Assembly: GCF_021869535.1 (NCBI RefSeq) | Contig: NW_026262690.1 | Coordinates: 69,378,001-69,442,000 of the forward strand | DNA length: 64,000 nt | Reading direction: 5' to 3' | DNA from: Mytilus californianus | Lineage: Eukaryota | Shown: positions 8,595-51,581 of the stretch, piece after piece | How the letters are laid out: every line of letters starts with the position of its first letter | Position numbering within the stretch: position 1 is the stretch's first letter | Translations under genes and position numbers: made by a program | Notes under the pieces: model-generated | Told to the model about the DNA's origin: nothing | What the model saw: the letters and a program-made list of their open reading frames with translations, nothing else | The model's database searches: none

Positions 8595-9789
8595 TCAGTG
8601 ATTAGATTCTAGTTTGTGCTTTTTGAAATCAGAATGCTTATTAAATTTCTTTCCACATTCTTTACACTGATAACGAGGTTCTCCAGAGTGCACGTGCATA
8701 TGAAACTTCATTGTTGACAATTGTGTGAACGATTTGTCACACAGACTGCACGTGTACGGTTGTTCTTTTGTATGAATTCTTCGATGACGAGCATAAGATG
8801 CATGGTAAGTAAACATTCTACCGCAAAAATCACATTTATACGGTTTTTCCCCAGTATGTAAGCGAACATGTCGTACGAGGTGATGCTTTTCGGTAAATTC
8901 TTTTGAACAATGTTCACATTTGTATTCTTTATTGACCGGTGGGAAGTGACATTTCATATGGCGAATAAGCTGATGGCTTTGTCCAAAATCTCGACCACAT
9001 ATATCACATTGGATAATCTTTCCCTTGTGTAAGGCCAATTCCCCAGTGTGTACGAGACTGTGTCGCCTCGGATAACTCTTTTGTTTGAAGGAGCGGTCAC
9101 ATATATTACAGTGAAAAGGTCGTTTGTCTGTATGGACTCTCATGTGAGTTTCAAAATCTCTTTTGTCCGGCTCATACTTTCCACATACGTCACATCTGAA
9201 CTCGTTATCCCCTTTTATGTTAGAATTTTGAGTTGTTCTATTGTGAACTGGTTCCCTCGCATGAACAGCCATATGTGTCTTTTTAAATTGCTTTTACTTG
9301 AAAGGGTTTTAAAGCAAATTTCACATTCCGAAGTTTTATCTTTTGTTGTTGTTTTTATTTGAGTACTAATCTCGTAATTTTTTCTTTTTATTTTCTGTTT
9401 TTTTCTGTTTTTGTTTTGTTGTTTCCTCTTCATGTGACAGTCGGTGTTGCATCATTGTGCGCCTGTTTGAAAACTTTCGAAGACAAATGTCACATCCTAC
9501 ACGCATTCTCCGGTACGTTTTCACACCTTTCTTTTGGTCTCATTAAAATCTCTGTGATCATAATCTAGGGATAGTTGATTATCAATGTTGTAGATGTCGG
9601 GCTCTTTCGATGCCTGAACTGTATGTACGATAAATTTTCCATTAATATACTCTTGTTTGACGTGATGAAATAAACTTGCACAATTTTCGTTTCGGTAATT
9701 TTGTCATCTATCGGTATTTCGTTCTCATTTGTTTCATAAAACTCAGGATCTCTTATAATGTAATTTCCATCGTCTTTAATGCGAGCCAT
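8595..9789 (-). pseudogene. ZNF paralogue 1: frameshifted C2H2 zinc-finger pseudogene
   Basis: Collinear with paralogues 2 and 3 from MARIKDDGNY to HKLESNH*, but with indels at ~9692 (-1), ~9528 (-1), ~9376 (-2) and ~9271 (+2), an in-frame 63-bp deletion of finger 3, and L->P in the finger 5 helix (SYPRRH). Residual 225-aa ORF at 8595-9272. Confidence 0.85.
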
Positions 9790-10319
9790 AATTCATGTAT
9801 CACAAAAACATCCTGTGAAATGAAAATAGCACAAAGTTACAATCAAGCTTCAGGAAAACCCGGACAAGTTATAATATGAAAAACATGAAATACTGCAGCT
9901 ATTAAAATTAGAGTGGCATTACAATTAGAGTTACATGCAGTTAGCTTACACATGAGATTTTTTTATTTTATTCATTATTTATTGAAAGAGGATTGCCAAC
10001 AGCCAGAGGCTACGTGCAGCTTTGGTTCACGACAGATTAAAGCTTATCTTCAGAAGAGACACTTTTATTCTGTCACTGCAGCAACAGCAGGCGAGTCACA
10101 TTGTTCTGCGGAACCCTTTTTATTTTTCTCATTAAAAATAGAATATGACAAAATATTAAATATATTGTAAAGCATTAATTTTGTTAGTTGAAATCGGGTA
10201 TGAAATAGCTTTCGGTAACTGCAAGTTATCTTAGATCGGTAGTTTGTATCTTATGTCTTTTTGTTATTTATTATGTACTAAGTACTATTTTTTAGTTTTT
10301 TCTTACATTTCTTTGTTAC

Positions 10320-10690
10320 ACCACTGTCCCAGGTTAAGGGGAGGGTCCGGCGACCAGAAACCTGTTAAATCCCGCCCTTTCTTTATGCTATGGTCCCAAG
10401 CAGGAACAATATAATCCGAGTGCTGTCGTTTATTGCTGTCTTCCATGTTTGTTTTTCCGTTCATTGTTGAAATATAGATAAAGTCATTTGTTTCTTTTTA
10501 GATTTTTCTTCTTCAAGTTTTGACATACCGGAGCCTTATATTTATTGCTTACTATAAGATATGAAATTGCTCATTGTTGAAGTCTGTACTCTGAACTGTA
10601 ATTGGCGTATTGTTTACATCTTTTTCCTTTGGTCTTGATGGGTAGTTGTCTCACTGGGAGTGGCAATCACACCACATGTCCTTATTTTTA
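10320..10690 (-). repeat. Reverse copy of the abundant unclassified interspersed repeat
   Basis: Reverse complement matches the 30850-31200 copy (e.g. ctcattgttgaag, agttgtctca, cacaccacat, cttattttt). Confidence 0.7.
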
Positions 10691-11849
10691 TATAAAATAT
10701 ACTAATAAAAGGTTGGTATCATAGATTATTCCATATACTAGTAAAAACTGAAAACCTCAGATAAAGTTTGGTAGATAACTAGCAATCTAGTACTACAGAT
10801 TTTTATTATTTTTTTTGCATTTATGTCCGTTGTCTCAATTATAATTAATTGGTAAAACATTAATAACCTTCCTTGTTTCTATCGTCATCTCGTCGTTGCC
10901 TCGTTCTATACATTTCCGCAATAACAACATATACTTTGGAAATTGTATTTGCTTGGTGGTACTGGGTTATAGAATGAGGACTTTTGTATTTCTTTGAAAT
11001 TGTTGAAATTGAAATTTTGAGTTCTTCTTCAATATCGCCCTTCATTACTCCAACATTCTTAAATTTTTAAGGAGACACTCCTCGTTTATATGAAATCTCA
11101 ACATCTTTATATAATGTGCATTGCATGAACAGATACAGTCCTATTGATAGTGCCTTACATTATATACCTTGAAGACATACCTTAAGCTAACATTTCTCCC
11201 ACACCATATTATAGCACTAACAAAAGTCTTGATATTTAAACACACAGAAACATTTCAGGCATTTACCAATATACTTATAAAATAAATCTAATTATCCAAC
11301 TGCATTCATTATTCTTTTACTGTATAGTATCTATATATATAAGTAATTACTCAATTAATTGAGTACTAGTACTGATTTGTCAACAATAAGAAGCTTTTGA
11401 GGTATCCTACTCTTTCATTGTTTGTCTATAATTAATTATTCATCTGTACTAGCTGTAGGGGGTTACGCAACTGATGATGTGTATTTGGTGTATACTTTGA
11501 AGCTAATTAAAAGGCTGACATTCAGATATTGCAAGAGTCAAGCAGCGGCATTATGTTTGTCCGAATGAGTCTATATATGGGTTGTATTGTCAATCGTGTT
11601 AAACATAGCTATAAAATAAATGTTTTAATTTTGTAAATGTCGCGTTACTGAATTCAATTTCAATTTATTATTTGATACTTTTAGCAAATAATGCATGGTT
11701 AATAACTGTATTTCATAATTTTGCATTCTGTTCTGATTATAATCGTTTACCTAGCTCCGTTAGATTCGTCTGTCGGTCGTTTTACCAATCTTATTAAAAT
11801 CAGATCTTTCACTTCGAAACAGATCAGATTGGTATAATTTGGAGGAGTT

Positions 11850-12100
11850 TCCGTCCCCGAGGATATCATGAGCCCACCAGTCAGCTGCTCTCTATTGTGA
11901 TGACATGACGTATCATTGATATGGTCATCCTTATAAATTAACTGTTCACAAAAATTTGAATTTTTCGAAATAATAAGGATTTTCTACACCAGGAATAGAT
12001 TACCTTAGCAGTATTTGGCAAAACTTTTCGGAAGTTTATGTCCTCATTACTCTTAAACTTCGTACTTTATTTGGCCTTTTTAATTTTTTGGATTCGACAG
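11850..12100 (+). mobile_element. Internal fragment of a Penelope/retrozyme-like element
   Basis: Its 5' end (gtccccgaggatatcatg) matches 52473-52490, and its 3' part matches 14350-14495 (ggaatagattaccttagc...ttggcaaaac...cgtactttatttggcctttttaa). Confidence 0.7.
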
Positions 12101-15638: not shown

Positions 15639-16895
15639 TCAGTGATTAGATTCTAGTTTGTGCTTTTTGAAATCAGAATGCTTCTCAAATTTCTTTTCGC
15701 ATTTCTTACACTGATAACGAGGTTCTCCAGAGTGCACGTGCATATGAAACTTCATAGTTGACAGTTGTGTAAACGATTTGTCACACAGACTACACGTGTA
15801 CGGTTTTTCTTTTGTATGAATTCTTCGATGACAAGTATAAACAGCATGATAAGTAAACCTTCTATCACAAATATCACATTTATACGGTTTTTCACCAGTA
15901 TGTAAGCGAACGTGACGTACGAGATGGTGCTTTTCGGTGAACTCTTTTGGACAATAGTCACATTTGTATTCTTTGTTTGTTGGTGGGTAGTGACATTTCA
16001 TATGGCGTATAAGCTGATGGTTTTGTCCAAAATCTCGACCACATATATCACACTGTATAATCTTTCCTTTATATAAGGCAAACTCCCCAGTGTGAACGCG
16101 ACTGTGTCGTCTCAGATGACTCTTCTGTTTGAAGGAGCGGTCACATATATCACAGTGATAAGGTCGTTTGCCTGTATGGACTCTCATGTGGTTATCAAAA
16201 TCTCTTTTGTCAGGCTCAAGCTTTCCACAGACCCCACATCTGAACTTATCCTCGTTAATATGACAGTTGTGAGTCTTTGTATGACTTTCATATCGGCTCC
16301 TCTTCCCAAAACATTTACCACAAATCACACATTTGAATGTTCTATTGTAAACTGGTTCCCTTAAATGAACAGCCATGTGTCTTTTTAAATTGCTTTTACT
16401 TGAAAGGGTTCTAAAGCATATTTCGCATTCCGAAGTGTTATCTCTTGTAGGTTTTTTAACTTTCGTACCAATATCGTGATAATTTTTCTTTTTATTTTCT
16501 GACATTTTCTGTTTTCGTTTTGTTGTTTTCTCATCATGCGACAGTCGGTGTTGCATCATTGTGCGCCTGTTCGAAAACTTTCGGAGACAAATGTCACATC
16601 CAACACGCCTTTTCCGATACGTTTTCACATATTTCCTTTTGGTCTCAAAGATATCTCTGTGATAATAATCTAGGTGTATTTGATTATCAATGTCGCTTAT
16701 GTCGGGCTCTTCCGATGCCTGAACTGTATGTACGATATATTTTCCATTAATATTCTCTTGTTTGACATGATAAAATAATCTTGCACAATTTTCATTGACA
16801 ATAATTTCGTCTTCTATCGATATTTCGTCCTCATTTATTTCATAAAACTCAGGGTCTTTTATAATGTAATTCCCATCGTCTTTAATAAAAGCCAT
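15639..16895 (-). CDS. ZNF paralogue 2: 418-aa C2H2 zinc-finger protein, 10 fingers, acidic N-terminal module
   Basis: Intact ORF with ten C-x2-C-x12-H-x3-5-H units and TGEKPY-type linkers; splice acceptor (ttttactttcacAG) 23 nt upstream of the ATG. Confidence 0.93.
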   Translation of the reverse strand: MAFIKDDGNYIIKDPEFYEINEDEISIEDEIIVNENCARLFYHVKQENINGKYIVHTVQASEEPDISDIDNQIHLDYYHRDIFETKRKYVKTYRKRRVGCDICLRKFSNRRTMMQHRLSHDEKTTKRKQKMSENKKKNYHDIGTKVKKPTRDNTSECEICFRTLSSKSNLKRHMAVHLREPVYNRTFKCVICGKCFGKRSRYESHTKTHNCHINEDKFRCGVCGKLEPDKRDFDNHMRVHTGKRPYHCDICDRSFKQKSHLRRHSRVHTGEFALYKGKIIQCDICGRDFGQNHQLIRHMKCHYPPTNKEYKCDYCPKEFTEKHHLVRHVRLHTGEKPYKCDICDRRFTYHAVYTCHRRIHTKEKPYTCSLCDKSFTQLSTMKFHMHVHSGEPRYQCKKCEKKFEKHSDFKKHKLESNH

Positions 16896-17540
16896 AATTC
16901 ATGTATTGCAAAAACGTCCTGTGAAAGTAAAATAGGACAAAATTACAATCAAGATTCAGGAAAATCAGGACAAGTTATAAAATGAAAGACATGAAATATC
17001 GCAGCTATAAAAATTAAAGCCGGATTGATCCTTCACAGACAATTAAAAGTTACAGGTATAAAGCTTACAAATGAAATTTGCCGCGTAGGTTTGTGACAGC
17101 TTCTCAACTTATTCTCCATCTAGAAGATTGGCTAATTGGCACGTAAAGAATGTGGTAGGGTTAAACAAGTCACATTAAACTCCAAATCATATTAATGAAC
17201 CAAAATTTAAAAAAAACATACAGGACAAGCAAAGGCCAGAGGTTCCTGACCGGGTACAGGCGCAAAAATGTGGCGGGGTGAAACATGTCTCAACCCTCTC
17301 CCTATACCTTTTAGCCAATGTTGGATAAACAAACTCGCAGCAAGACGCACAGTAAACTCAGTTTAAAAGAAGTCTGAGTCCGATGTTAGAATAAGTAACA
17401 GAAGAAACTAAGACAAATATATTCCAGTAAAAGGTTTATATCAATGAATATTTCATAGGAATACGCCACACCTCAGATAAAGTATAGTATACAAATAGCG
17501 ATACTACATATTATTATTCATTTTTCGTTGTGAATTTTGA

Positions 17541-19583
17541 TTTTTTATACGACCGCAAAAAAATTTTCGGTCGTATATTGGTATCACGTCGTCGTCGTCC
17601 GCGTCGTCCGAAGACGTTTGGTTTCCGGACAATAACTTTAGTATTAGTAAATAGAAATCTATGAAATTTAAACACAAGGTTTATAACCACAAAAGGAAGG
17701 TTGGGACCGATTTTGGGGGTTATGGTCCCAACAGTTTAGGAATAAGGGGCCAAAAAGGGGCCCAAATAAGCATTTTTCTAGTTTCCAGACAATAACTTGT
17801 GGAACGGTGTATGGATCTCTCTGAATTATACCACAAGTTTCCATACCACAAAGGGATGGCTGGGTTGGCTTTGGGGTGTTATGGCTCAAACCGTTTAGGA
17901 ATTAGGGGCAAAAAAGGGGGAAAAACAAGGTTGTCCTGGTTAATGGACAAATACTTTAGTACAAAACATAATTTAAAGCAGTGAAAGGGATAAATCAAAT
18001 ACAATATTTGAATTACCTCCCTTACACTGCTTTTAAAATATGTATAAAGTAATGGTTAATGAACAATTAAGACAATTTAAAACAGTGTAAGGGAGGTGAT
18101 CCAAGTATAATGTTTTGATTACTTCCCTTACACTGCTTTTAAATTATGTTTAAAGAAATGCATATTTATAAAGGAAGACCAGTAAAAATATCTGCAAATT
18201 TTGCATCTTTTTTTTTTACAAAAAAATCCATATGAAAGATTTGACACCCTTTTTTAAATTCTATTATATAATAGATTAAGTAAGCACTATGGTAAATTTA
18301 AATGGGTAATTGGAAATTTGAATTGCGATTATGACCATATCTTGAGGGAAAGAATGTTTTGGGGGAAAAGGGGGGGGGGGGGGGGGGGTAAAAAGAAATT
18401 GTGTGGGGTCAATTTTTTCTCATTTCAGATTTCAGAAATTAAAAAGAATTATTCTTCAAATATTATTTTTTTTCAAATTTCAAATATTGAAAAATTTCAA
18501 GAAGTTATCTTAATTGCACAGTATGGCGCATTATATTTGTAAAATCTTTGACCACATTTATTTATTTGTTATGCCGAATCTAACAGTGTATTTAGATTTT
18601 TAATTTTGGGTCCAGTTTTCAAATTGGTCTACATTAAGGTCCAAAGGGTCAAAAATTAAACTTAGTTTGATTTTAACAAAAATTGAATATATGGGGTTCT
18701 TTGATATGATGAATCTAAACATGTATTTAGATTTTTGATTTGGGCCCAGTTTTCAAGTTGGTCCAAATTGGGGTCCAAAATTAAACTTTGTTTGATTTCA
18801 ACAAAAATTGAATATATGGGGTTCTTTGATATGCTGAATCTAACCATGTATTTAGATTTTTTATTTGTGGGCCCCGCTATCAAATTGGTTCATATTGAGG
18901 TCAAAAGGGTCCAAAATTAAACTTTGTTTGATTTCATCAAAAATTGAATTATTGGGGTTCTTTGATATGCCAAATCTAACCGTGTATTTAGATTTTTAAT
19001 TTGGGGTCCCGTTTTTTAAATTGGTCTACATTAAGGTCCAAAGGGTCCAAAATTAAACTTAGTTTGATTTTAACAAAAATTGAATTCTTAGGGTTCTTTG
19101 ATATGCTGAATCTAAACATGTGTTTAGATTTTTTATTGTGGGCCCAGTTTTCAAGTTTGTCCAAGTTGGGGTCCAAAATTAAACTTTGTTTGATTTCAAC
19201 AAAAATTGAATAAATGGGGTTCTTTGATATGCTGAATCTAACCATGTATTTTGATTTTTGGGCCCCGTTATCGAATTGGTCCACATTGAGGCCAAAATTA
19301 AACTTTGTTTGATTTCATCAACAATTGAACTCTTTGGATTCTTTGATGTGCTGAATCTAACCATGTATTTAGATTTTGGATATTGGACCATAATAGGTAA
19401 ATTAAAAATTTTAAGTTTTAGACCACATTCATTCTGTGTCAGAAACCTATGCTGTGTCAAATATTTAATCACAATCCAAATTCAGAGCTGTATCAAGCTT
19501 AAATGTTGTGTCCATACTTGCCCCAACTGTTCAGGGTTCGACCTCTGCGGTCGTATCAAGCTGCGCCCAGCGGAGCATTTTAT
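17541..19583 (+). mobile_element. Helentron-type non-autonomous element (HINE-like family A, copy 1) with internal tandem array
   Basis: 5' hairpin tatacgaccg...cggtcgtata, (GTC)n microsatellite, a conserved block shared with 25686-28712, a tandem array at ~18590-19380, a 3' subterminal inverted copy tgcggtcgtat, then a short stem-loop and T-rich end. Confidence 0.8.
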
Positions 19584-21852
19584 TAATAATTGGTAAACAT
19601 GATCATCAATACGTCGACTCGTTCCATGCATTTCCCTCATAACAGCATATGCTATGTAAACTCGTGTTCACTTTTTGCATGGAACCGGGTCATAGAATGA
19701 TGCTTTGTGTATTTCTTGGAATTAATTCTTAATTGATTACTTAGCTCTGATACTCTTAATCTTTTAGGGAGTACTCCCCATGTACATCAACTTTACAGCC
19801 ACATCTGTTTTGTAAATTTACATTGAATGAATAGATACAGAATCTTATTGATAGTGCATTTCATTAAATGATAAAGACATACCTTAATAATACCTTACAC
19901 TTATTTCTCCTCCACCATATTGTAGCTCTTGATATCTAAACACACAGTAACATTCCACGCATTAATCAATATATTTATCTAATTAACCAACTGCATTCGA
20001 TATTCTTAAGTAACTCAATTAATTGAATATTGATTATCGACAATTAGAATCCTTGTCAGTCTGCTACTCTCGCATTGTTTGTCTTTAGTTAACAGGCGTA
20101 CGTGGTTTATAGGTGGTTTGTGTACTGATGGTGTGTATTTCCATTCAGTAATGTACAGTACATTTGGAAGCTAAATAAAAGACTGACATTCCGATATTGG
20201 AAGATTCAAGCATTGATACATTTCCCGATATTAGGGTTGTCTTCATGGTTCTAACAGAAGTTAGTATTGTTTACCGTTTTCAACTACGCTTTTAAAAAAA
20301 CTTTTATTTTTGTACAGCTGCTTCCGTTACTACATTCATAATTTAATTAATTTTGCAATCTAATTAAAATCATATCGTCTACTTTGCTCCATTAGATTGG
20401 TTTGTCGGTCGTTTTACCAATCTTATCGAAATCAGATACTTGAGTGAAATGTCTGATTTTAATCAGAATGATATAATTTGGATACTACACTTGCATATTC
20501 AATATTCTTTTCTACTTTGTGCACATTAAGATGTAAAATATAGAAATAATTATAACTGGATGAAGATTTTGGTAAACTGCCATGAATTACTAGTAGATGG
20601 CAATATCTAGAATGAAATTCAGACGTGGCTTGTATTGATATTTGGGTTTTGCATTTAATAAGGGTACGATTATTGTCTTCTTTGGTCTGTTTGTACGCAA
20701 AAATTGGTAAGGTTAACCCTTTGGACGAAGAAAATTGTAAAATGAATCAAACATGAATTTGAATATATTCAGTAGTTACAAACATTATGAGAAAATAAAC
20801 TGAAACTTTAATGCATTATTTGTGGTTAATAAAATTACCAGATGACAAAGTCATGGACCCTATCCTTTTTGCAAATGATTTCTCAACATTATACAGGTCA
20901 CAACCTAAATAACAAGATGATATATGCCAAAAAGTTTTTTTATGATTATTTGCTCTATTAATGAAAAATCTAGGTGTTAAATGCCATTTGAGTCTTTGGT
21001 CTATTTTTTGTTTTTGCCATGGCGTTGTCAGTTTAATGCCACTTTAGTCTTTGGTTTATGTTTGGTTTTTGCCATGGCGTTGTCTGTTTATCTTCGAAAA
21101 TATACTCCTTTAACCGTTCGTATTGGGTACACTTTTTTTGTGTGTAGAAATACACATAGACGGTAACGGGCAAACAACTTTACCTGGAGACTCAAATATG
21201 ATCGCTTCCTTTACTATACAAGTCATAATATAAAATTGTAAAATAGTTTTTGAATCTCATATTTTCGGACCAATTTCGCGAAGTTTTATGTTCTTTTGAA
21301 TTTCTTTAATCGATGCTATAATGTTGGTATTTTGGAATTAAAAATTCGCTAATGAACGTCGTAAAGATGAACTTCATAGGGTCCACGAAAAAATACTAAA
21401 AAAGGTCGGTACAATGGTACTCTTCCGATATCTATTTTGAAAGACTGAAATAACAAGACTAAAGATTTAGTCTTCGTTGATAATATAGTGTCAATGAGAC
21501 AGCCATCCAACATCACAAAAACACATCTAGAGGTCAATATTCAGACTTGAACAGATATGTATCCTAAATTTTCAGGACCAGTTGAGGTTTACATCTTGTT
21601 AATCTATTCCGTTATCTAAACACTATTGTATAATACATATTAATTCTTGACAACTGATGATATACTTTATGACAAAGCCAAGAAAAGTGAAAGGAAACTA
21701 TCACAGATTTAATATTTAACAGAAATTACACATTGCCATGGTACTAGTAGACAGCGAACCCTTAGCAACAACAAAAAAATAAATAATTACAACAAATTCC
21801 TTACAAATAGTCTACTGTTAATGCTATTTTTTGCTTTGAAATACATAAATCT

Positions 21853-23109
21853 TCAATGATTGAATTCTAGTTTGTGCTTTTTCAGACGAGTGTGCTGACC
21901 AAATTTTTCTCCACATACTTTACACTTATAACGAGGTTCTCCAGAGTGCACATGCATGTGAAAGTTCAATGTTGTCATTTGTGTAAATGATTTTTCACAC
22001 ACACCACATGTATAAGGTTTTTCTTTTGTGTGAATCCTTCGATGATTAGCGTAAACAGCGTGAAAAGTAAATCTTTGATCGCAAAAATCACATTTGTACG
22101 GTTTTTCACCAGTATGTAATCGAACATGTCGTACGAGATGATGCTTTTCGCTGAACTCTTTTGGACAGTGTTCGCATTTGTATTCTCTCTTAGCTGGTGG
22201 GTTGTGACATTTCATATGGCGAGTTAACTGATGGCTTTGTCCAAAATATCGGCCACATATTTCACACTGGATAGGCTTTCCTTTGTTTAAAAATTCTCCA
22301 GTGTGAACGCTATCGTGTCGTCTGAGAGCGCTCTTTTGTTTGAATGAGAGGTGACACAGATCACACTGAAAAGGTCGTTCGCCTGTATGAACTCTCATAT
22401 GATTGTCAAAATTTCTCTTATTCGACTCCTGTTTTCCACACACTTTACATCTGAACTTGTTATCCTCTTTTATGTCACAGTTGTGAGTTTTTGCATGACT
22501 TTTAAAATTGCTTCTCTCCCCAAATGTTTTGCCACAGATCTCACACTTGAACGTTCTATTTGAAACTGGTTCAACTAAATGGACAGCCATGTGTCTTTTT
22601 AAGTTGCTTCTACTTGAAAAGGTTATGAGGCAAATTTCACATTCCCAAGTCTTATCTTTTGTTGGTTGTTTTATTTGAGTACCAAGCTCGTGATATTTTT
22701 TCTTTTTATGTTCTGACATTTTCTTTTTTCGTTTTACTTTTTCCGCAACATGTGACAGCTGGTTTTGAATCATAGTGTGTTTGTACGAAAACTTCCGGAA
22801 ACTAATGTCACATCCAAGACGCCTTCTCCGATACTTTTTCACATCTTTCCTATTGGTCGCAAAAAAATCTCTTCGATCATAATCAGGTGGTGTTTGATTA
22901 TCAATGTCGTATATGTCGGGCTCTTCCGATGCCTGAACTGTATAAACGATGTGTTTTCCATTAATATTCGCTTGTTTGACATGATAAAATAACCTTGCAC
23001 AATTTTCGTTTACGGTAATTTCGTCCTCTACCGGTATTTCGTCCTCAGTTATTTCATAATACTCAGGATCTTTTATAATGTAACTTTCGCAGTCTTTAAT
23101 TAAAGCCAT
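21853..23109 (-). CDS. ZNF paralogue 3: 418-aa C2H2 zinc-finger protein (finger 1 degenerate, 9 intact)
   Basis: Intact ORF collinear with paralogue 2; finger 1 reads CDISF...QNQLSH (second Cys and first His lost); acceptor 22 nt upstream of the ATG. Confidence 0.93.
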   Translation of the reverse strand: MALIKDCESYIIKDPEYYEITEDEIPVEDEITVNENCARLFYHVKQANINGKHIVYTVQASEEPDIYDIDNQTPPDYDRRDFFATNRKDVKKYRRRRLGCDISFRKFSYKHTMIQNQLSHVAEKVKRKKKMSEHKKKKYHELGTQIKQPTKDKTWECEICLITFSSRSNLKRHMAVHLVEPVSNRTFKCEICGKTFGERSNFKSHAKTHNCDIKEDNKFRCKVCGKQESNKRNFDNHMRVHTGERPFQCDLCHLSFKQKSALRRHDSVHTGEFLNKGKPIQCEICGRYFGQSHQLTRHMKCHNPPAKREYKCEHCPKEFSEKHHLVRHVRLHTGEKPYKCDFCDQRFTFHAVYANHRRIHTKEKPYTCGVCEKSFTQMTTLNFHMHVHSGEPRYKCKVCGEKFGQHTRLKKHKLEFNH

Positions 23110-24102
23110 GTTTCATTGATTGAAAGACATCCTGTGAAATAATAATTGCACAAAATTACGGTCATAGTTCAGGAAAAGCCATGCATGACAAGTCAGAAAA
23201 TGAAAACAAAAACATGAAATACCACAGGTTTTAAAAAATAGAGCGGCATTATTGCTTCATAGACAATTAAAAGGTACAGTAATCTTACAAATGAGGTTTG
23301 CTGCCTAGGTTCATGACAGATACTAGTAGTCTTACCTTGAAGGAATTGGTTTCAAGTAAATAGCTCACCTCAACTTATTTCTCATCAATGAGATTGTATA
23401 ATTTCATTTAAACTTATAAACTGTGACCTGTGTCGTAAAAGAAAAATGATACTGAATTTTTACTTCAGATTTTTTTTTACCGGAATGGCTAGGCTATTTG
23501 CATGTTAAGTTCTTCATAATTGTGTCCTTTTATCTATAGCTTAAAAAAAAAAATAATTTTATATGCAACATGATTTAAGTTTTTTTATCAAACATATATG
23601 GTAAGAACACTGTCTTACCAGTATAGGTCTGTTTACCTTATAATGAATAGTGTTAACTTACCAATATGTGTGTGTGTTTACCTTATAAATAAAGTCAATT
23701 AAACTTATCAGGGGTCAAATACGTGACAAATTTAAATTTGACCAGAGATCAATACAATACAACATACAATATTTACTTCTTATATAAACCAGATTATGTA
23801 AAAATAATTTTTCATTTTAAATTCTCTTGCGACTTGTCCAGGCTTTAAACGAAAGTTGTATATCTTTAATATGTGAACATTTTTGAGACATCAACCCAAC
23901 GACACACTAAAAACTAGAAGCGTAGGATACTGGGTCCATGCTATCTTTTCCCTTGTTTTCCTTTGCTCCTTAGTGAATTATTGTTTTATTGGCATTCATA
24001 CCACATATTTATATTTTTATATTCACTCAGGAGGTTCCCATAAAGTTATCCTTCAACTTCACTTTCTTTTGTGTAGATCATATTCCTCTCCACATAATTT
24101 AA

Positions 24103-30103: not shown

Positions 30104-30400
30104 AAATGTCCTGTATAAAAAGCGCAAATGTCCTGTATATAAAGCGCAAATGTCCTATGAAGTGAATCGTAAATGTCATATAAAGTGAATCGTAAATGTT
30201 CTTTGAAGTAAAGTGTAAATGTGTTATAAAGTGAATCGTGAATGTCCTATGAAGTGAATCGTAAATGTCATATAAAGTGAATCGTAAATGTTCTTTGAAG
30301 TAAAGCGTAAATGTGTTATAAAGTGAATCGTGAATGTCCTATGAAGTAAAGCGTAAATGTCCTATACAGTGAAGCGTAAATGTCCTATAAAGTGTCCGCG
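30104..30400. repeat. 23-bp minisatellite with a 4-mer (92-bp) higher-order repeat
   Basis: Unit aaatgtcctatgaagtgaatcgt; variant order A-B-C-D-A-B-C-D-A'. Confidence 0.9.
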
Positions 30401-34173: not shown

Positions 34174-35421
34174 TCAATGATAAAATTCTAGTCTGTGCTT
34201 TTTAAGATAACTGTGCCTGCCAAACGTTTCTCCGCATTCTTTACACTTATAACGAGGTTCTCCAGAGTGCACATGCAGGTGATGTTTCAACGTTGACAAC
34301 TGTGTAAATGATTTGGTACATATACTACATGCGTATGGCTTTTCGTTAGTGTGAATTCTCCGATGAGAAGTGTAAGAAGCGTGAAAAGTAAATTGTTTAT
34401 CGCAAAAATCACATTTATAAGGTTTTTCACCGGTATGTAATCGAACATGTCGTACGAGATGATGCTTTTCGCTAAACTCTTTTGGACAAAAGTCACATTT
34501 GTATTCTCTCGTAGCTGATGGGTTGTGACATTTCATATGGCGAGTCAACTGGTGGCGTTGTCCAAAATATCGGCCACAGATCTCACACTTGATAGGCTCT
34601 TCTTTGTGTAAAATTTCTCCAGTGTGAACACGACTGTGTCGTCTGAGATGACTCATTTGTTTGAATGAGAGGTGACACAGATCACAATGAAAAGGTCGTT
34701 CGCCTGTATGGACTCTCATGTGATCCTCAAACTCTCTCTTTTCCTGCACAAGCTTTCCACACACTCCACATTTAAACTTAAACTTTTTATCCTCGTTAGT
34801 AACATCACCGTTGTGAGATCTTACATGGTTATCTAGTCGGCTTTTCCTTCCAAAAGTTTTGCCACAAATATCACATTGAAATTTCTTATTGTGATTTGAA
34901 TCTCCTGTATGAATTTCAATATGCCTTTTTAAATTCCAGTTCCTTGAAAAGCTTTTATAGCAAATTTTGCATTCCAAAGTTTTATTTTGTATCAATTTAC
35001 CTAATAAAATACCATTCTCAGATTCCGTTTCCTTTTTGCTTTTTTGAAAGACATCCATTTTCTTTCTTCTTTCTGGTGTGGCCCCAGTATGCGACAGTCG
35101 ATGTCGGATCATTGTGTACCTGTCAGAGAATATTCGGAGACAAACGTCACACTCGGCTCGCTCTTTCTGAGAATTTTCCACATCTTTTTGCAGGGCGGCA
35201 ATAGTATTAATTTCAGGTGGTTTATAATCACTGTTATAGATTTCAATCTCGTGAACTGTAAATACCAGATCTAATGCACTTGTATATTCTTCTTTAATTT
35301 TATAAAATAACCTAACACATTCTTCAGTCACGTTTATTTCGTCTTCCATAACTTCTTCGGTTATTTCATAATACTCGGGATCTTGTATAAAGAAACTTTC
35401 ATCGTCTGTTTGGATCGTCAT
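34174..35421 (-). CDS. ZNF paralogue 4: 415-aa C2H2 zinc-finger protein, 10 fingers
   Basis: Intact ORF. The likely start is MTIQTDDESFFIQDPEYYEI at 35421, 16 nt after the acceptor tttttcgtttacAG; the track start at 35457 lies in the intron. Confidence 0.92.
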   Translation of the reverse strand: MTIQTDDESFFIQDPEYYEITEEVMEDEINVTEECVRLFYKIKEEYTSALDLVFTVHEIEIYNSDYKPPEINTIAALQKDVENSQKERAECDVCLRIFSDRYTMIRHRLSHTGATPERRKKMDVFQKSKKETESENGILLGKLIQNKTLECKICYKSFSRNWNLKRHIEIHTGDSNHNKKFQCDICGKTFGRKSRLDNHVRSHNGDVTNEDKKFKFKCGVCGKLVQEKREFEDHMRVHTGERPFHCDLCHLSFKQMSHLRRHSRVHTGEILHKEEPIKCEICGRYFGQRHQLTRHMKCHNPSATREYKCDFCPKEFSEKHHLVRHVRLHTGEKPYKCDFCDKQFTFHASYTSHRRIHTNEKPYACSICTKSFTQLSTLKHHLHVHSGEPRYKCKECGETFGRHSYLKKHRLEFYH

Positions 35422-35495
35422 GATCGGTAGAATCTTCCTGTAAACGAAAAATAACAAATAACTATGCGTTGATGGAAGATTTTATATAGTCTCGA

Positions 35496-36025: not shown

Positions 36026-39000
36026 TAATATCTCAAAGAAAGTCCTACATTGACTTTGTTATAATACAGTTACTTCAGAGTGGAGTGCGGGGGATTACTT
36101 TGTCTAGTTTTATGCATAACTTTTCTAGACTCTGTGCGATTTAGAGGATTTGTCTATCATTGGCAACCGTACGATGACCTCTTAATGTCTTTTAGTTTTT
36201 TAAAAGGTTGGACCTTAGTTCCAATTCTTTCCTAAGGCATGACCGGTGTAAAGCCGTGTGAATTACTGCATCTTCATGCACTGAAATATAGTTCCCAGAT
36301 ACTTTCCACACACAAGCGAACTGAGAAAAAAACTGTGTTCAATCTTTGGAGTTTTGGGGGCAATCCATCATTTAGCTAGACTAAGACCGATTCGAAAGTA
36401 GTTCTTAAATAATCCATAGTTTCTAGTAATGTGTACGAGACGAATTTATCGACCATCTACTGCATGTGTGTGAGACCAATTTATCGACCATGCATCTTAT
36501 TGTATAAACGTCTCTCAATTCGAAAAGAAGGAACAAAGACAAAGAAGCGACTGCTTATAGAACATAGAACGTTTGTGCTTTTTAAAACTAGGGACCCATG
36601 AAAATATAAGAACATGGGATTTTTTTAAAGATACGTAAGTTGTAATGTTGTGACGTTTTGGTAGTAATATATAATGTATCGATAGAAAAAAAATTATATT
36701 CATTGTAAAGTTCTAAACCAATCTGATTAAAATTTATATCTATCGATACTCGCGTGCTCGTCGAATGCTTCAATATGAGCAGATTGACTACTAAATGTAA
36801 AAAAAAAAATAGCGGGAAAATTAGTTTTGATATTTTGAAAAACTTTCAAAATTCGCATATTTAACATAAAACTAAACGGGATGCAGATGCTTATTTAGGG
36901 AGTGCCTCCTTAAAATCAAGTATTTATCAACTTGCTGGCTAGATTGGTAATTAAGGTAATTGTGAGTAAGTAAATGAAAGTACGTATATTCAATACAATC
37001 AATACATGATAATCAACAAAAAATTAAAACAAAGGTAAGTTTTAAATTTTCAGCCCCTTTTTTTAAAGTTTCTTGTCCTTGTTTCCGTAACTTGGTTTAC
37101 TTACGTTAAGTTACAAATGTTTCTCTTCCACTATAGTGTACAACAGTAGCTCTAGATGAAACCACAACTTCACAAATATATGATAAATTGGAGTACCATC
37201 GACTGATATGTACAATATTTAAATGACTCTTGATCTTAGTAGTGATCTGTCAAATTTTAGACAACTCAATTAGTATCCACTAGCATCTTTTACTCTGTCA
37301 TTATTTATGGTTAATTGATTAGATTTGTGTTATGAGTTTGTGTTCAGTCATAGGTTGTTGTATACTGGGGATGTGTATAACGTAAGCTAAATATTAGGTC
37401 ACAGTAAGCTTAATATAAAGCCAATGTTGATATGACACGACAGAAGACATGTTTTGTTGATAAAGATATTTTGATAAAATTGTTAGCAACAATTGTAGAT
37501 TAAAAAAAAGAATAAAAATTCGTATTTTTGTCGTGCTGTTTAATATTTAGATAAATTGCCTATATAATTTTTAACATTTTTATCAGGCTAGTTAAAACGG
37601 AACTGGTTCTAACTTCTAGTATTTTATTTTCTAAGCCTCGAATCTACATTACATATTTAAATCAAAGCATCGTTGATGTTGTGATCCAGCCATATTCATA
37701 GCTAGTCTGATATTCTTTCTGACCATACTTTTATCAATATTTTTCCAATCTTACTGTTAAATTTCAATGTTATTACCCACAGGTAGGGAATTTCGCAATA
37801 TTGATGCAAATAATGATATATATATATATTGATATTTCAATTTTAGACTCAATGTCAGATATTTTTTTTTATAAATATTTGCAATTTAATGGTATTGACA
37901 TGAATGGAAAGTGAAATCGTCAAACAAGTAATATATTTTTTAATATGCCATTAATCATAACTGGCTTAATAATTTCCAGAAAGAGGCCTTGGAAATGCAC
38001 TTTCTCAACAACAAAATTGAAAAAAAAAAATAATAACTAATGTTTATCTAAATTTGTGTTCATTCTTCACTAAGAAAAAATACATTTCGAATTCCTGTAT
38101 TCAAATTTAAATGTACAAATACCTAATGCTGAGATATTTCCAATTACTGTTAAATAGAAATATAATGGGATATAAATGTAGAACAAACAAATTAATTTTA
38201 TTGCAGAAAATGCTCAGGTAAGAGTTACATAATTTTGTTTATTGTTTCAACCAAATTTCTGATAATTGTAACTAATTAATTAGATCTTGATTATTGACTT
38301 ATGTCAGATGATAATGACACTGATTTTACAAGTGAAATAAAATTTGCTTGCATTTTTTATACATAATTTTACATTTTTTGTCTTTTCTTTGAAAAAAAAC
38401 CACGTCTGATTAATCATTCAGCTAGCTAGCAAAACTAACAGAATATTTTAATGTAGTGTAGATCAAAATAAATAATACATTTGTAGGTTTACTATTGAGG
38501 TCAAGAATGTGTGTATTCAGTTAGGTGTGTAATAAATTGTGCCTATTTTATTATGTAACAGGTCATGAGATATTAAATGTGGTGAATTAAGACTGGGGTT
38601 GTTTCCAATTAATACTTACACCTTTGAGTGTAATTATTAGAAAATCATGACAGTTTATAATCATACTGACTCTTACTTGCCTATGGAAAGAATTAGAGTT
38701 ATCCCATTTTAAAAAAGTGTGGGAATCAACTTAGATATATTAATACACATGTTGACCTAAATTTCATAGAACAAAAACTTACACAAGCATAAGATAATAA
38801 TAAAATACTTTCAAAAATTTTTATCAACTGATTCAATTGATGTAAAAATACTTTTTCAATTTATTTCATAAATAGTAAATCATAAATTTTGATTTACAAA
38901 GGAACTATATGCAAGTGTATATCTAAAATAAAAGGGTTGTTCGACCAATCTTTTCTTAATTTAAGGGCAAATAACATGTCAAAAGTTGGCAGTTGATGAT

Positions 39001-40729
39001 TAAAATGGTGTAGAAAGATTCTGCCAGTCATAAAAACACATAATTAGTTTCATGACATGTCTTCAACTTAGTATTCTGCACCATCTCCAAAAACAGAGTG
39101 ATCGCATAGATCCAGCATGGCTGAATCAAAAATCCAGCGTTATTTGGTAATTACCTGCAATGTATTGTACCCAATGGTTTTAACAGTAAAACTATACAAA
39201 GCCTTGTTGTACCATTTTGTACCATACACTACATTTTTTTAAGTAATTCAAAGAGAACACATGTAACCAATGCATATAGGAACTATGGAGGCAAGACACA
39301 ACGAACCTCTGACACTTTTAATTCAAACAAAAAAATTTGTTGGAGGAAAATAAAACTAGAGGCTCTAAAGAGCCTGTGTCGCTCACCTAGGTCTATGTGC
39401 ATTTTTTCTATTTACAGTTTCTCTCTATCTTAAGTTTTTGCCCAAAACACAAAAATTGGTAAAAATCGTCATCAAAGAGCAAGAACTCTTAAAACAAGTC
39501 GACTAACGATTTCGACCATGTGACTTATTTGTAGATCTTGCTAATCATTTTTGTAACATCGCGATGACCGTGAGGGCATTTCGATGTATTGCTATCGCCT
39601 AGATTTCCATTACGTAACTTTCGTTTTGGGTTTGTAACCGATCTATAAACATGATAAATACGCGGATATTAACGATTGCAAACTAACACTCCTTATCGTT
39701 TGTTATAAATACATCTCTTCAATGAATACTGATAAAAATATTTTTGTTAAGAACATAAATTGATAACATGAAAATGTTTTTTCGTTAGATATATATATAT
39801 ATATATATATTGATAATATCTATGCACACATACCGAAAAATTGTGTTAAAGCATGCGGAAGAATATCTCAAGAACGTTTTGCGACAATCCCGACAAGGAC
39901 CGGTAACTCTGTAATTGTTTTTGCGGGAAAATATGAATGCCTACTTATATCCAATCTTTTAGAAAAATCGAATTTTTACAGAAGAGTGTCCACCATGCAC
40001 TTGCACTGCACTATTATTAGAATAGTATAATAGAATAATATACAAATGGATGAAAATTATATATATATGTAACTGTTATATTAATATAATATATAACAAC
40101 AAACTAGTATATACTGATTTGTATCACTACAATCATGACAATATAATAGTTATTACGGTGAGGTCGAATTTCCTGTCATTTATTCATCATCCACGCACGA
40201 ACTTGTCTCAGAAAAAAATATATCTCTGTACATTAACCTCAGTTTCAGGTATAGAGATGTGACTTTTTTCTGTGACAAGTGCTTTTGACCATCCACAAGA
40301 ACTTGCGGTCATCCGATGTTCAGTACTTCAGTACTTTGATTATTTAAAGTGTTTATTTATCTACTCTAGTTTTCAAGATAATATGCAAATTAATGACAAT
40401 GTATTAAATTTAAAAAAATACATGTTCTTCTTAAAACATCTTTGCACGACTCCATCTCGCTAAGCAAATCTATTGGTAAGTCACAAAAAAGTATTTTTTA
40501 AAAACAAAAAGAAATATAATTTTTTTTATCAAAAAAACTAATACTGTAGATATGTCCATCAAAACGTTTAGTAAATATACTGTTTTTCTGTCTTTTACAG
40601 AAATTGGGGGTACCAGAATTCTCAAAATCAATACAGTCATAATTTACATTAGCGATATTGGACATTTTTTAAAGGATCAGTCATTACAGAAATGCCGTAT
40701 TACAGTACCATAGTATACACCTCGACATT

Positions 40730-41827
40730 TCAATGCTTGTGTTTTTTAAAATGGCTAAGTTTATCAAATTCCTCTCCGCATTCTGTGCACGTATAACGAG
40801 GTTCTCCAGAATGCACAAGCATGTGAAGCTTCAATGATGATGATTGTGTATATGACTTGTCACACAAACTACACGTGTAAGGTTTCTCATTTGTATGAAG
40901 TCTACGGTGAATAGTCAAACCAGAGTCAGTAGTAAAGCATCGTCCACAAAAATCACATTTATAAGGTTTTTCACCAGTATGTAAGCGAGCATGTCGTACG
41001 AGATGATGCTTTTCGGTGAACTCTTTTGGACAAAGGTCACATTTGTATTCCTTCTTAGCCGGCGGGTAGTGGCATTTCATGTGACGAATAAGCTGATGAT
41101 TTTGTCCAAAATGTCTACCACAGATTTCACACTGTATAAAACTTCCTTCGTGTAAAAATTCTCCCGTGTGAACACTACTGTGTCGTCTGAGATGGCTTTT
41201 CTGTTTGAAAGATAGATCACACACGTCACACTGAAAAGGTCGTTCGCCTGTATGAACTCTCAAATGGTTCTCAAATCCTCTCTTATCCGGCTCTTGTTTT
41301 CCACACACTCCACATTTGAATTTTAACTGTTTATCATCTCTTACAACATCACCGATGTGAGATCTTTCGTGATTTACAAGTAGGTAAATCTTCTCAAAAG
41401 TCCTTCCACAAATCTCACACTTAAATTTCTTACTATTACGTGATTTCCCTCTATGAGTAGTCATGTGACTTCTTAAATTGCTGAAACTTGAAAAATCTTT
41501 GGAGCAAATTTCACATTCATTACTACAATCATTTGTACTAATCTCAAGACCATTATCCGTACCGATTTCATCATTTTCTTTCTCAAACTTTACGTGCCTT
41601 GGCGAATCCCCAATAAGCGAATCTTGTGCGCATGTCGAATGACATTCAGATACAGATGTTACATTAAATACAGATTTGACTTTTTCTGTTCTATTATCCT
41701 CAATATTAGTCTGTTTGTAATCAGTTTGGTATACATCGGGCTCTTTCTTCAGTCGAACTGTATTTATTTTATCTGTGGCACTCGTATATTCTTGTTTTAT
41801 CCCACAAAAACCTTGCACATTTTCCAT
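40730..41827 (-). CDS. ZNF paralogue 5: 365-aa C2H2 zinc-finger protein, 9 fingers, N-terminally truncated
   Basis: Open 365-codon frame with fingers 2-10 collinear with the paralogues. The ancestral start position reads ATA (41901) and the N-terminal module is decayed; acceptor at 41924-41926. Confidence 0.8.
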   Translation of the reverse strand: MENVQGFCGIKQEYTSATDKINTVRLKKEPDVYQTDYKQTNIEDNRTEKVKSVFNVTSVSECHSTCAQDSLIGDSPRHVKFEKENDEIGTDNGLEISTNDCSNECEICSKDFSSFSNLRSHMTTHRGKSRNSKKFKCEICGRTFEKIYLLVNHERSHIGDVVRDDKQLKFKCGVCGKQEPDKRGFENHLRVHTGERPFQCDVCDLSFKQKSHLRRHSSVHTGEFLHEGSFIQCEICGRHFGQNHQLIRHMKCHYPPAKKEYKCDLCPKEFTEKHHLVRHARLHTGEKPYKCDFCGRCFTTDSGLTIHRRLHTNEKPYTCSLCDKSYTQSSSLKLHMLVHSGEPRYTCTECGEEFDKLSHFKKHKH

Positions 41828-42492
41828 TTACTTAATATTGGTCATCGACTTCGTTGTCTTTTCTCTGTCATTGAACTACCGTTGTCTTTGATGAAAGTTA
41901 TAACTTTTGATTTTAAATATTCTCTGGAAATATAAAAAGTCGATAAATTACAATATAGGACAGACCAACGATGTAGATTATTGTAGGACGGTCCTAAATT
42001 TCAGAATGTTTAAAACTAAGGATTACTCTGAATTCAGAATGATACGATATATGGAAATGGGGGAGGGGTGTAAGTGTTAATAGCAAAAACAACTATATAC
42101 GCAGAATGGTGCTCTACATTATAATTCACTAGACACAGTTATTTCTATGTACCAAGTAAAAGTTTGGGTTGCAACCCTTAATAACCACTTACAGATAGAA
42201 ATCGGAAAGTGTCGTGCATTGCCAATCTGATAAAAAATTCAGATCTAGTGTGACTCGCGTACCATAGTCGAAGCACAGACTGGTTTTAAAAAAATAGTAC
42301 ATTGAAGATACGCACCAAGATTAAATAAATGAGAAAAAAAATATGTACAATTTATTATATCTATGTGCTGCTGTTACTTTTTCCTCATCAAACAGAAAGT
42401 GTATGAGCTACCATCAATCTGATTGATAAACTCTGCAGCGATCAATTAAAGAAAAAAAATGCTTCAAAATCAGACTTGCGTAACCCTGGACG

Positions 42493-51580: not shown

Positions 51581-51581
51581 A

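What the first reader, a model, noticed from the sequence alone, without database searches (positions are those of the whole stretch)
8595..41901. Tandem ZNF cluster with an unannotated acidic SUMO/SIM-like N-terminal module: candidate bivalve analogue of KRAB/FiNZ repressor ZNFs
Seen: paralogues 2, 3 and 4 (and relic 1) share a ~50-aa N-terminus with consensus M..(I/Q).DD..Y/F.I.DPE(F/Y)YEI.E.....EDEI.V.E.C.RLFY.(V/I)K(Q/E)(E/A). It does not have the pattern of KRAB, BTB, SCAN or ZAD. It carries psi-K-x-E SUMO-acceptor motifs (VKQE in 1 and 2, IKEE in 4, IKQE/LKKE/VKFE in 5; lost as VKQA in 3), preceded by acid-flanked hydrophobic stretches resembling SIMs (EISIEDEIIV, EDEITV). Established: tandem C2H2-ZNF arrays with small N-terminal repressor modules silence transposons in vertebrates, and SUMO is central to that pathway. 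From recollection, unverified: the cyprinid FiNZ domain is also acidic, begins MAFIK and contains psi-K-x-E, and paralogue 2 begins MAFIK. Inference: this may be an independent molluscan effector module, here embedded in DNA full of diverse transposons.
Basis: partly seen in the sequence, partly recalled or inferred. Interest (0 to 1): 0.78.

Follow-up and report, generated by a model that had tools for sequence, protein, structure and literature searches.

The report
Mussel zinc-finger cluster, orphan acidic N-terminus
Five neighbouring zinc-finger genes of a Mytilus mussel share a real, selectively conserved and unannotated acidic N-terminal segment with a SUMO-type lysine, but it occurs only in this one small gene cluster, so it is a private regulatory tail rather than a mussel counterpart of the large KRAB or FiNZ transposon-silencing families.

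Summary
Five tandem, minus-strand C2H2 zinc-finger paralogues lie at 8595-41901. Three are complete (418, 418 and 415 aa), one has a truncated N-terminus, and one is a frameshifted relic. The complete copies and the relic share a 60-65-aa N-terminus. It consists of an acidic, hydrophobic, probably disordered half and a predicted helix carrying an invariant lysine in a psi-K-x-E context.

The segment has no Pfam or PDB match. It evolves under purifying selection (omega 0.06-0.30) as strong as on the fingers, whereas the linker is near neutral.

An exhaustive profile search of 1.84 billion representative proteins found only:
- the orthologues of this same cluster in other Mytilus or mytilid genomes;
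- one remote environmental contig;
- one spurious bacterial hit.

No fish, FiNZ or KRAB protein was hit. The SIM consensus is not met at a conserved position. The module shares an exon with the fingers. The contact residues of the central fingers are identical in all paralogues, which is unlike an arms-race family.

My best reading is a small, Mytilus-restricted transcription-factor family with a SUMO-switchable effector tail, working like Sp3 or ATF7. The KRAB/FiNZ analogy remains untested and is weakened. Interest is modest. The scan had already noted the lost start of ZNF5 on this window.

The parts
8595..9815 (-). Paralogue 1, a relic. The N-module remnant lies at 9492-9789 and is split by frameshifts and stops. 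The third finger is deleted. The 3' 225-aa ORF (8595-9272) is still open. The splice acceptor CAG is at 9813-9815.
   Evidence: the 3' ORF versus p2 gives omega 0.23
15639..16921 (-). Paralogue 2: 418 aa with 10 C2H2 fingers. The acceptor CAG is at 16919-16921, 23 nt before the ATG at 16895. An in-frame TGA lies two codons before the ATG.
   Evidence: RNA reads have depth 1-3 with the first mate on + only, and contig X2 stops fitting at 16920.
16701..16895 (-). N-module of paralogue 2 (residues 1-65). VKQE is at 16755-16766.
   Evidence: omega 0.20-0.30
21853..23134 (-). Paralogue 3: 418 aa, with a degenerate first finger. The acceptor CAG is at 23132-23134. The N-module is at 22915-23109. VKQA at 22969-22980 is a change specific to this window, because the M. 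coruscus orthologue has VKQE.
34174..35440 (-). Paralogue 4: 415 aa from the ATG at 35421. The acceptor CAG is at 35438-35440. The N-module is at 35242-35421, with IKEE at 35287-35298.
   Evidence: versus the M. coruscus orthologue the module has omega 0.06
40730..41926 (-). Paralogue 5: 365 aa. The ancestral ATG is now ATA (41899-41901) and frame-shifting deletions follow. A new ATG at 41827 keeps only the second half of the module (IKQE at 41789-41800). The acceptor CAG is at 41924-41926. M. coruscus shares the same lesions.
   Evidence: The remnant and linker evolve neutrally (5 nonsynonymous and 0 synonymous changes; omega 1.14), while the fingers have omega 0.21.

Best explanation
This is one small tandem cluster of lineage-restricted (Mytilus or mytilid) 10-finger C2H2 transcription-factor genes. 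Each has its whole coding sequence on one exon behind a short 5'-UTR intron.

The complete members carry an orphan N-terminal effector region of 60-65 aa.
- Residues 1-32 are an acidic stretch with interspersed aromatic and aliphatic residues. This stretch has 11 D/E and 0-2 K/R, is predicted disordered, and has the invariant motifs DPE(Y/F)xE and E(D/E)EI.
- It is followed by a predicted helix from about residue 33. The helix holds an invariant lysine in a psi-K-x-E SUMO-consensus context.

Shown here: the region is under purifying selection as strong as on the fingers, it has no known relative, and it is confined to this cluster.

Inferred: the region is the non-DNA-binding effector of these factors. 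It likely works as a SUMO-switchable tail, as in Sp3 or ATF7. In that model an acidic/hydrophobic segment contacts co-regulators, and SUMO conjugation at the conserved lysine turns or limits the output towards repression by recruiting SIM-bearing co-repressors.

The paralogues probably bind related DNA motifs, because the contact residues of the central fingers are identical. They probably regulate ordinary targets rather than tracking transposon families. Paralogue 5 is a module-less variant retained since before the split from M. coruscus.

Confidence by part: about 0.9 that this is a real, constrained orphan module in a small restricted family, and about 0.35-0.4 for the SUMO-switch mechanism.
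For: - Architecture and fingers.
- One-exon CDS with a shared acceptor and an in-frame upstream stop. Contig break at 16920.
- Module omega is 0.24-0.30 between paralogues and 0.06-0.20 between species. The linker has omega 0.25-0.8, not significant, and the fingers 0.2-0.4.
- All four ORFs are intact in M. coruscus.
- In a more distant mytilid contig the module is 80% identical to p4, against 67% for the following 122 aa.
- Across the 9 aligned sequences, including the remote P0007, the Lys is invariant and psi is kept in all; p1 (VKQE) and p5 (IKQE) carry the motif too. The E at +2 is kept in all of these but one.
- No Pfam or PDB relative.
- Restricted distribution.
- AF2: residues 1-32 have low confidence, and a helix from about residue 33 has pLDDT 70-77.
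- Composition.
- Literature: IKEE SUMOylation makes Sp3 a repressor that recruits SETDB1, Mi-2 and L3MBTL (PMC2978682). SUMO motifs are needed in 149 of 166 human repression domains that contain them, and activation domains are acidic residues interspersed with aromatic or leucine residues (bioRxiv 10.1101/2022.08.26.505496).
Against: - No experiment bears on function.
- psi-K-x-E is short. It occurs in 12.3% of inactive human 80-aa tiles, and shuffles of the p2 and p4 N-termini give at least one about 23-24% of the time.
- The motif falls inside the predicted helix. Canonical Ubc9 sites are extended, although model confidence is low.
- The window's p3 has lost the glutamate (VKQA) yet stays intact.
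- The two AF2 models disagree outside residues 35-47.
- Expression evidence is thin, at depth 1-3 in one RNA run.
- Gene conversion between p2 and p3 inflates their apparent conservation. The p4 comparisons do not depend on it.
Confidence: 0.45

Rival explanations
1. The module is an independently evolved molluscan repressor domain, analogous to KRAB or FiNZ, and its ZNFs silence transposons through SUMO, SIM and SETDB1-type heterochromatin.
For: - Tandem ZNF cluster with a private acidic N-terminus and a conserved psi-K-x-E.
- FiNZ is also N-terminal and Glu-rich, and its cofactor is unknown.
- SUMO motifs are pervasive in repression domains.
- Repeats and a retrotransposon lie nearby.
Against: - The family is a single cluster of 3-4 module-bearing genes. 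No other member turned up among 1.84 billion representatives or in the M. coruscus proteome.
- No SIM consensus at a conserved site.
- The contact residues of fingers 5-7 are identical in all paralogues. Contact identity (0.50-0.72) is only slightly below non-contact identity (0.61-0.73).
- Fingers are under purifying selection.
- The module shares the finger exon, unlike KRAB and FiNZ.
- No sequence link to FiNZ or KRAB.
Confidence: 0.12
2. The module is a plain acidic transcription activation domain. Acidic residues keep aromatic and aliphatic residues exposed for co-activator binding. The psi-K-x-E lysine is incidental or only a minor brake.
For: Residues 1-32 have 11 D/E, 0-2 K/R, 3-4 F/Y and 8-9 I/L/V/M, and are predicted disordered. 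This matches the composition rule for activation domains. The window's p3 tolerates loss of the SUMO-consensus glutamate.
Against: The most conserved single element is the helix with the lysine motif, kept even in the 29-33% identical P0007. Composition alone cannot tell activation from repression, because KRAB and FiNZ are Glu-rich too.
Confidence: 0.2
3. The module is a partner-binding or self-association region. It would work like ZAD, SCAN or the disordered N-terminal dimerisation regions of CLAMP and CTCF, letting the paralogues homo- or heterodimerise.
For: A helix is predicted at about residues 33-60 with pLDDT 70-77. The paralogues have near-identical central fingers and could bind as pairs. 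N-terminal dimerisation regions are common in multi-ZNF architectural proteins (titles and abstracts).
Against: The helix is no more amphipathic than shuffled sequence. pTM is 0.29 and there is no globular fold. There is no cysteine or zinc-knuckle pattern as in ZAD, and the one Cys is replaced by Ser in a mytilid orthologue.
Confidence: 0.1
4. The region has no function of its own. It looks conserved only because the duplicates are young or are homogenised by gene conversion.
For: There is a gene-conversion signature between the N-modules of p2 and p3. p5 survives without the first half. The family is small.
Against: - Between p4 and p2/p3, dS is about 1.0-1.2, yet module omega is 0.30 and the linker 0.54-0.74.
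- Between species, the p4 module has 2 nonsynonymous against 6 synonymous changes (omega 0.06, p=0.0004).
- Once truncated, the p5 remnant drifted at omega of about 1. That is the expected pattern if the intact module is what selection maintains.
- A 29-33% identical relative keeps the motifs.
Confidence: 0.08

Closest known systems
Sp3 inhibitory domain and the ATF7 activation domain (SUMO-consensus IKEE beside an effector region of a zinc-finger or bZIP factor)
   Same: A sequence-specific transcription factor carries a psi-K-x-E lysine next to its effector region; p4 has literally IKEE. In Sp3, SUMO at this lysine recruits SETDB1, Mi-2 and L3MBTL1/2 and silences targets (PMC2978682). In ATF7 the IKEE lies inside the N-terminal activation domain (PMC1851647, abstract).
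   Different: There is no sequence homology beyond the 4-residue motif. The Sp3 effector regions are Gln-rich, not acidic. The motif here is N-terminal and within a predicted helix. SUMOylation has not been tested.
FiNZ domain of cyprinid ZNFs (PMC10547256)
   Same: Both are N-terminal, acidic, lineage-restricted and absent from domain databases, and both sit on tandemly clustered poly-ZNF genes. The cofactor is unknown in both.
   Different: FiNZ is 28 aa, on its own exon, with about 700 genes in zebrafish that are positively selected and expressed at zygotic genome activation. Here the module is 60-65 aa, on the finger exon, in 3-4 genes whose fingers are under purifying selection. The profile search hit no fish protein.
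KRAB-ZNFs (KRAB-A box, PF01352) with TRIM28
   Same: Both have an N-terminal accessory region on clustered C2H2 arrays. SUMO takes part in KRAB/TRIM28/SETDB1 silencing.
   Different: There is no KRAB profile match even at E<=10. The name 'KRAB' on the M. coruscus models is an automatic label. There is no separate exon, no large family and no diversification of contact residues.
Acidic activation domains (acidic exposure model)
   Same: The composition of residues 1-32 and the predicted disorder fit.
   Different: That class is defined by composition only. Activity has not been tested, and the conserved lysine motif is more typical of repression domains.

Membership tests
C2H2 poly-zinc-finger transcription factors | Tandem C-x2-C-x12-H-x3-5-H fingers with TGEKP-type linkers matching PF00096/PF13465 | tested here: met
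   8-10 matched stretches per protein with E 1e-33 to 1e-47; 10 fingers mapped in p2
KRAB-ZNF | N-terminal KRAB-A box matching PF01352 | tested here: not met
   No KRAB hit at E<=1 on whole proteins or at E<=10 on the N-termini alone
KRAB-ZNF | Effector box on its own exon upstream of the finger exon | tested here: not met
   The acceptor CAG lies 16-23 nt before the ATG. The module and fingers form one uninterrupted ORF.
FiNZ-ZNF | 28-aa N-terminal domain on a separate exon (PMC10547256) | tested here: not met
   The conserved stretch is 60-65 aa and shares the finger exon
FiNZ-ZNF | Sequence similarity to the FiNZ consensus | tested here: inconclusive
   The exhaustive profile search returned no fish protein at E<=1e-3. 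No FiNZ sequence could be obtained from a tool or paper for a direct alignment. The shared MAFIK start rests on memory only.
FiNZ-ZNF / KRAB-ZNF as a kind | Large, rapidly expanding family (hundreds of genes) with diversifying DNA-contact residues | tested here: not met
   Only this cluster's orthologues were found. Contact residues of fingers 5-7 are identical, and finger omega is 0.2-0.4.
SCAN, BTB/POZ and ZAD ZNFs | Match to the respective Pfam domain at the N-terminus | tested here: not met
   No such hits. Each paralogue gave a different sub-threshold noise hit.
SUMO-acceptor consensus site | psi-K-x-E at a conserved position | tested here: met
   VKQE, IKEE, IKQE or VKEE sits at one alignment column in all copies and orthologues except the window's p3 (VKQA)
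SUMO-acceptor consensus site | Covalent SUMO conjugation at that lysine | not testable with these tools
   Needs a biochemical assay. The motif lies in a predicted helix, which argues mildly against it.
SUMO-interaction motif (SIM) | Hydrophobic core psi-x-psi-psi or psi-psi-x-psi (or three consecutive V/I/L) with an acidic flank, conserved among members | tested here: not met
   Only p2 and its orthologue have 'IIV'. p3 (ITV), p4 (INV) and P0007 lack a core at that site.
Acidic activation domain | Disordered stretch of acidic residues interspersed with aromatic, leucine or aliphatic residues | tested here: met
   Residues 1-32 have 11 D/E, 0-2 K/R, 3-4 F/Y and 8-9 I/L/V/M, with pLDDT about 51. 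Only composition was tested; activity is not testable here.

The most novel reading that the evidence does not exclude
The module is an independently evolved molluscan repression domain that acts through SUMO conjugation at its invariant lysine. Its ZNFs silence repeats in mussel germline or early embryos. That would make it a miniature, early-stage counterpart of the KRAB and FiNZ systems, caught before any family expansion.
Probability: 0.1. Interest if true: 0.65.

Novelty: new variant of a known kind. Interest (0 to 1): 0.3.

Why it matters
Lineage-specific N-terminal accessory regions on zinc-finger arrays (KRAB, SCAN, ZAD, FiNZ) are how animals repeatedly built new regulator families. 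None has been described for molluscs, although molluscs have hundreds to thousands of ZNF genes.

This case supplies a well-delimited orphan module under clear purifying selection, with natural variants that are ready-made experiments. These are a glutamate-to-alanine change in the SUMO consensus of p3 in this species only, and a paralogue that lost the first half of the module before the split from M. coruscus.

It also shows that a private N-terminal region need not mark a large TE-tracking family. The value is as a testable small example and an annotation correction, not as a new system.

Tried and rejected
- Obtaining a FiNZ sequence for direct comparison failed. The FiNZ paper's held supplements are only BED tables. 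A text search for 'MAFIKE' matched the town Mafikeng, and 'MAFIKEES' matched nothing.
- ESM Atlas look-ups of the p2 and p4 N-termini gave no usable hit.
- A word search with the remote relative P0007 found only itself.
- The contig of P0001 (M. galloprovincialis) is not on record.
- P0006, a 1153-aa bacterial repeat protein that matched profile positions 28-52 six times, was rejected as a repeat-summed chance hit.
- A fold search was not run. Both AF2 models are low confidence (mean pLDDT 46.8 and 62.3; pTM 0.37 and 0.29), and the better one is a single helix, so matches would be meaningless.
- Calling the helix amphipathic was rejected, because its helical moment is no higher than in shuffles.
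- An upstream coding exon extending the module was rejected for p1-p3, because an in-frame TGA lies two codons before the ATG.
- The ORF at 50123-51649 was considered as a gene and rejected. It is a 60-bp minisatellite.

Full report
**What is there.** The region 8595-41901 holds five minus-strand C2H2 zinc-finger ORFs in tandem.
- p2 (15639-16895) and p3 (21853-23109) are 418 aa each.
- p4 is 415 aa from the ATG at 35421.
- p5 (40730-41827) is 365 aa.
- p1 keeps only a 225-aa 3' ORF (8595-9272).

Pfam sees nothing but C2H2-type fingers, with 8-10 matched stretches per protein. Ten fingers can be mapped in p2.

tblastn with the N-termini finds the p1 module at 9789-9492. It is split over three frames and carries stops, and the third finger is deleted, so p1 is a relic.

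The duplicated unit is little more than the exon plus about 200 bp upstream. The spacers do not align with each other and hold satellites and a very high-copy repeat.

**Organism and orthologues.** The closest proteins are from Mytilus galloprovincialis and M. coruscus. The M. coruscus locus is syntenic at 93-97% nucleotide identity. It holds intact ORFs of 418, 418, 415 and 368 aa for p2, p3, p4 and p5.

The deposited M. coruscus gene models are wrong: one fuses p5 and p4, and the others have false 3' ends. Their name 'KRAB' has no domain support.

A Logan contig from a more distant mytilid (83% nucleotide identity) carries the p4 orthologue. Its module is 80% identical, against 67% for the next 122 residues, and a frameshift follows the module.

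**Gene structure.** All five copies share a pyrimidine tract and CAG acceptor 16-23 nt before the start codon. In p1-p3 and their orthologues an in-frame TGA lies two codons before the ATG. The module is therefore the true N-terminus, and the whole coding sequence is one exon.

A contig from run X2, whose kind is only guessed to be RNA, stops fitting at 16920, which matches the acceptor. A stranded RNA run shows depth 1-3 over the p2 CDS with the first mate on the + strand only. This fits weak minus-strand transcription.

In p5 the ancestral ATG is ATA (41899-41901), and two deletions shift the frame. A new ATG at 41827 keeps only the second half of the module. M. coruscus shares these lesions, so they predate the species split.

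**The module.** The alignment has nine sequences: three window paralogues, three M. coruscus orthologues, the M. galloprovincialis protein, the distant mytilid and the remote P0007. It shows these invariant positions: M1, DPE at 14-16, E19, E26, E28-I29, E33, L38, K43 and T55-V56, in p4 numbering.
- Residues 1-32 have 11 acidic and 0-2 basic residues, 3-4 F/Y and 8-9 aliphatic residues.
- AlphaFold2 gives low confidence for residues 1-32. With nine sequences it predicts a helix from residue 33 at pLDDT 70-77. With six sequences it predicts a helix at 35-47 at pLDDT about 62. pTM is only 0.29-0.37, so there is no globular fold.
- The helix is not more amphipathic than shuffled sequence.
- The psi-K-x-E motif sits in one column in every copy and orthologue. 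Only the window's p3 reads VKQA, and its M. coruscus orthologue reads VKQE, so that loss is recent.

**Selection.** Nei-Gojobori estimates give the following.

| Comparison | Module omega | Linker omega | Finger omega |
|---|---|---|---|
| Between paralogues (dS up to about 1.2) | 0.24-0.30 (Fisher p 0.001-0.002) | 0.54-0.80 (mostly not significant) | 0.20-0.39 |
| Between species | 0.20, 0.20 and 0.06 (p2, p3, p4) | - | - |

In p5 the truncated remnant and linker evolve neutrally, with 5 nonsynonymous and 0 synonymous changes and omega 1.14. Its fingers stay constrained at omega 0.21. So selection acts on the intact module, and the module decays once it is truncated.

One oddity is that synonymous divergence between species is 0.17-0.21 in the module against 0.00-0.08 elsewhere. 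For p2 and p3 the site pattern fits gene conversion between the two modules. For p4 it is unexplained.

**Is it known, and how widespread is it?**
- Scanning the N-termini alone against Pfam at E<=10 gives a different sub-threshold family for each paralogue, which is noise.
- A profile against all PDB sequences gives nothing below E 0.5.
- An exhaustive HMMER search of 1.84 billion representative proteins with the 70-column profile gave six hits at E<=1e-3. Three are M. coruscus models of this cluster, and one is the distant-mytilid p4 fragment. One is a bacterial repeat protein matched six times on 25 columns, which is spurious.
- The sixth hit is P0007, a 103-aa ORF on a 6.4-kb, 32% GC environmental contig. 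It keeps DPEY.E, EEEI, ESC, VKEE and TV at 29-33% identity, but no finger lies in the 4.2 kb downstream.
- Word-index searches at 90% clustering found only the Mytilus orthologues.
- No fish, FiNZ or KRAB protein was hit.

The module is therefore an orphan and, as far as public proteins show, confined to this one cluster.

**SUMO and SIM.** The acceptor consensus is met and conserved. The motif is weak evidence on its own, however. Shuffles of the p2 and p4 N-termini yield at least one in about 23-24% of trials. It also occurs in 12.3% of inactive human 80-aa tiles. Three motifs in the p5 N-terminus are unusual (P=0.0006), but one of them is lost in M. coruscus and that region evolves neutrally.

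The SIM reading fails. No psi-x-psi-psi or psi-psi-x-psi core lies at a conserved position. Only p2 has 'IIV', where p3 has ITV and p4 INV.

**Arms-race signature.** The DNA-contact residues of fingers 5-7 are identical in all four intact paralogues (KSHR, GHQR, T/SHHR). Overall contact identity (0.50-0.72) is only slightly below non-contact identity (0.61-0.73). This is unlike KRAB or FiNZ families and suggests a shared core motif.

**Mechanism.** The composition of residues 1-32 fits the acidic-exposure rule for activation domains. The conserved psi-K-x-E fits the commonest feature of repression domains. SUMO motifs are required in 149 of 166 human repression domains that contain them, and a 10-aa IKEE tile from the transcription factor MGA is sufficient to repress.

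The nearest working models are Sp3 and ATF7. In Sp3, SUMO at IKEE recruits SETDB1, Mi-2 and L3MBTL1/2 and silences target genes (PMC2978682). ATF7 has IKEE inside its N-terminal activation domain.

I therefore commit to a SUMO-switchable effector tail on a small family of ordinary transcription factors, at about 0.35-0.4 for that mechanism. The rivals are:
- a plain acidic activator (0.2);
- a dimerisation region (0.1);
- no function (0.08).

All functional steps are inferred. Only conservation, composition, distribution and gene structure are shown.

**Verdict.** This is a new variant of a known kind: a zinc-finger array with a lineage-private N-terminal accessory region. Interest is modest.

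Noticed in passing
window 50081-51584: A 60-bp unit repeated about 25 times (98% matches) creates a false 508-aa ORF (50123-51649). That ORF gave a spurious weak Pfam hit.
   Followed up: partly
window 55210-57782 (-): A non-LTR retrotransposon. Its endonuclease ORF (56592-57782) and reverse-transcriptase ORF (55210-56619) overlap in different frames.
   Followed up: partly
window 60134-61327 (+) and 62801-63910 (-): Two single-exon rhodopsin-type GPCR ORFs (7tm_1, E 6e-26 and 2e-22) lie next to the ZNF cluster.
   Followed up: no
window 17258-19621: The spacer between p3 and p2 is a very high-copy repeat that includes a 136-bp satellite (18565-19377). RNA-seq depth reaches about 2,000 with the first mate on the - strand, which is the opposite orientation to the ZNF genes.
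   Followed up: partly
window 16701-16895, 22915-23109, 35242-35421 versus L001 and L004: Synonymous divergence from M. coruscus is 0.17-0.21 in the N-module codons but 0.00-0.08 in the rest of each gene. p2 and p3 show a gene-conversion pattern, with states shared between paralogues within a species. The p4 excess is unexplained.
   Followed up: partly
window 16896-16921, 23110-23134, 9790-9815: p1-p3 and their M. coruscus orthologues have a six-codon upstream ORF. Its ATG lies 7 nt before the main ATG and it overlaps the main ATG out of frame. p4 lacks it.
   Followed up: no
L001 and L004 (M. coruscus CACVKT020005605.1): The deposited gene models for this cluster are faulty. One 609-aa model fuses p5 and p4, and two others have false 3' exons. 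Intact single-exon ORFs exist. The product name 'KRAB' is unsupported.
   Followed up: yes
window 8595-9272 (-): The relic p1 keeps an open 225-aa ORF with seven fingers and its own ATG. Its omega against p2 is 0.23, so either the gene was disabled recently or a truncated protein is still made.
   Followed up: partly
L003 1463-2035: In a more distant mytilid (Logan contig of SRR15505939), the p4 orthologue has a frameshift directly after the module. It may be a pseudogene or an assembly error.
   Followed up: no
L002 1868-2179: An environmental contig (ENA ERZ25067879, 32% GC) has a module-like 103-aa ORF with no zinc finger in the following 4.2 kb. The module may exist outside ZNF genes, or on a separate exon in another mollusc.
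   Followed up: partly
window 3733-5292, 30119-30394, 42597-43441: Further satellites with units of 31/93 bp, 23/46 bp and 191 bp flank and interrupt the cluster.
   Followed up: no
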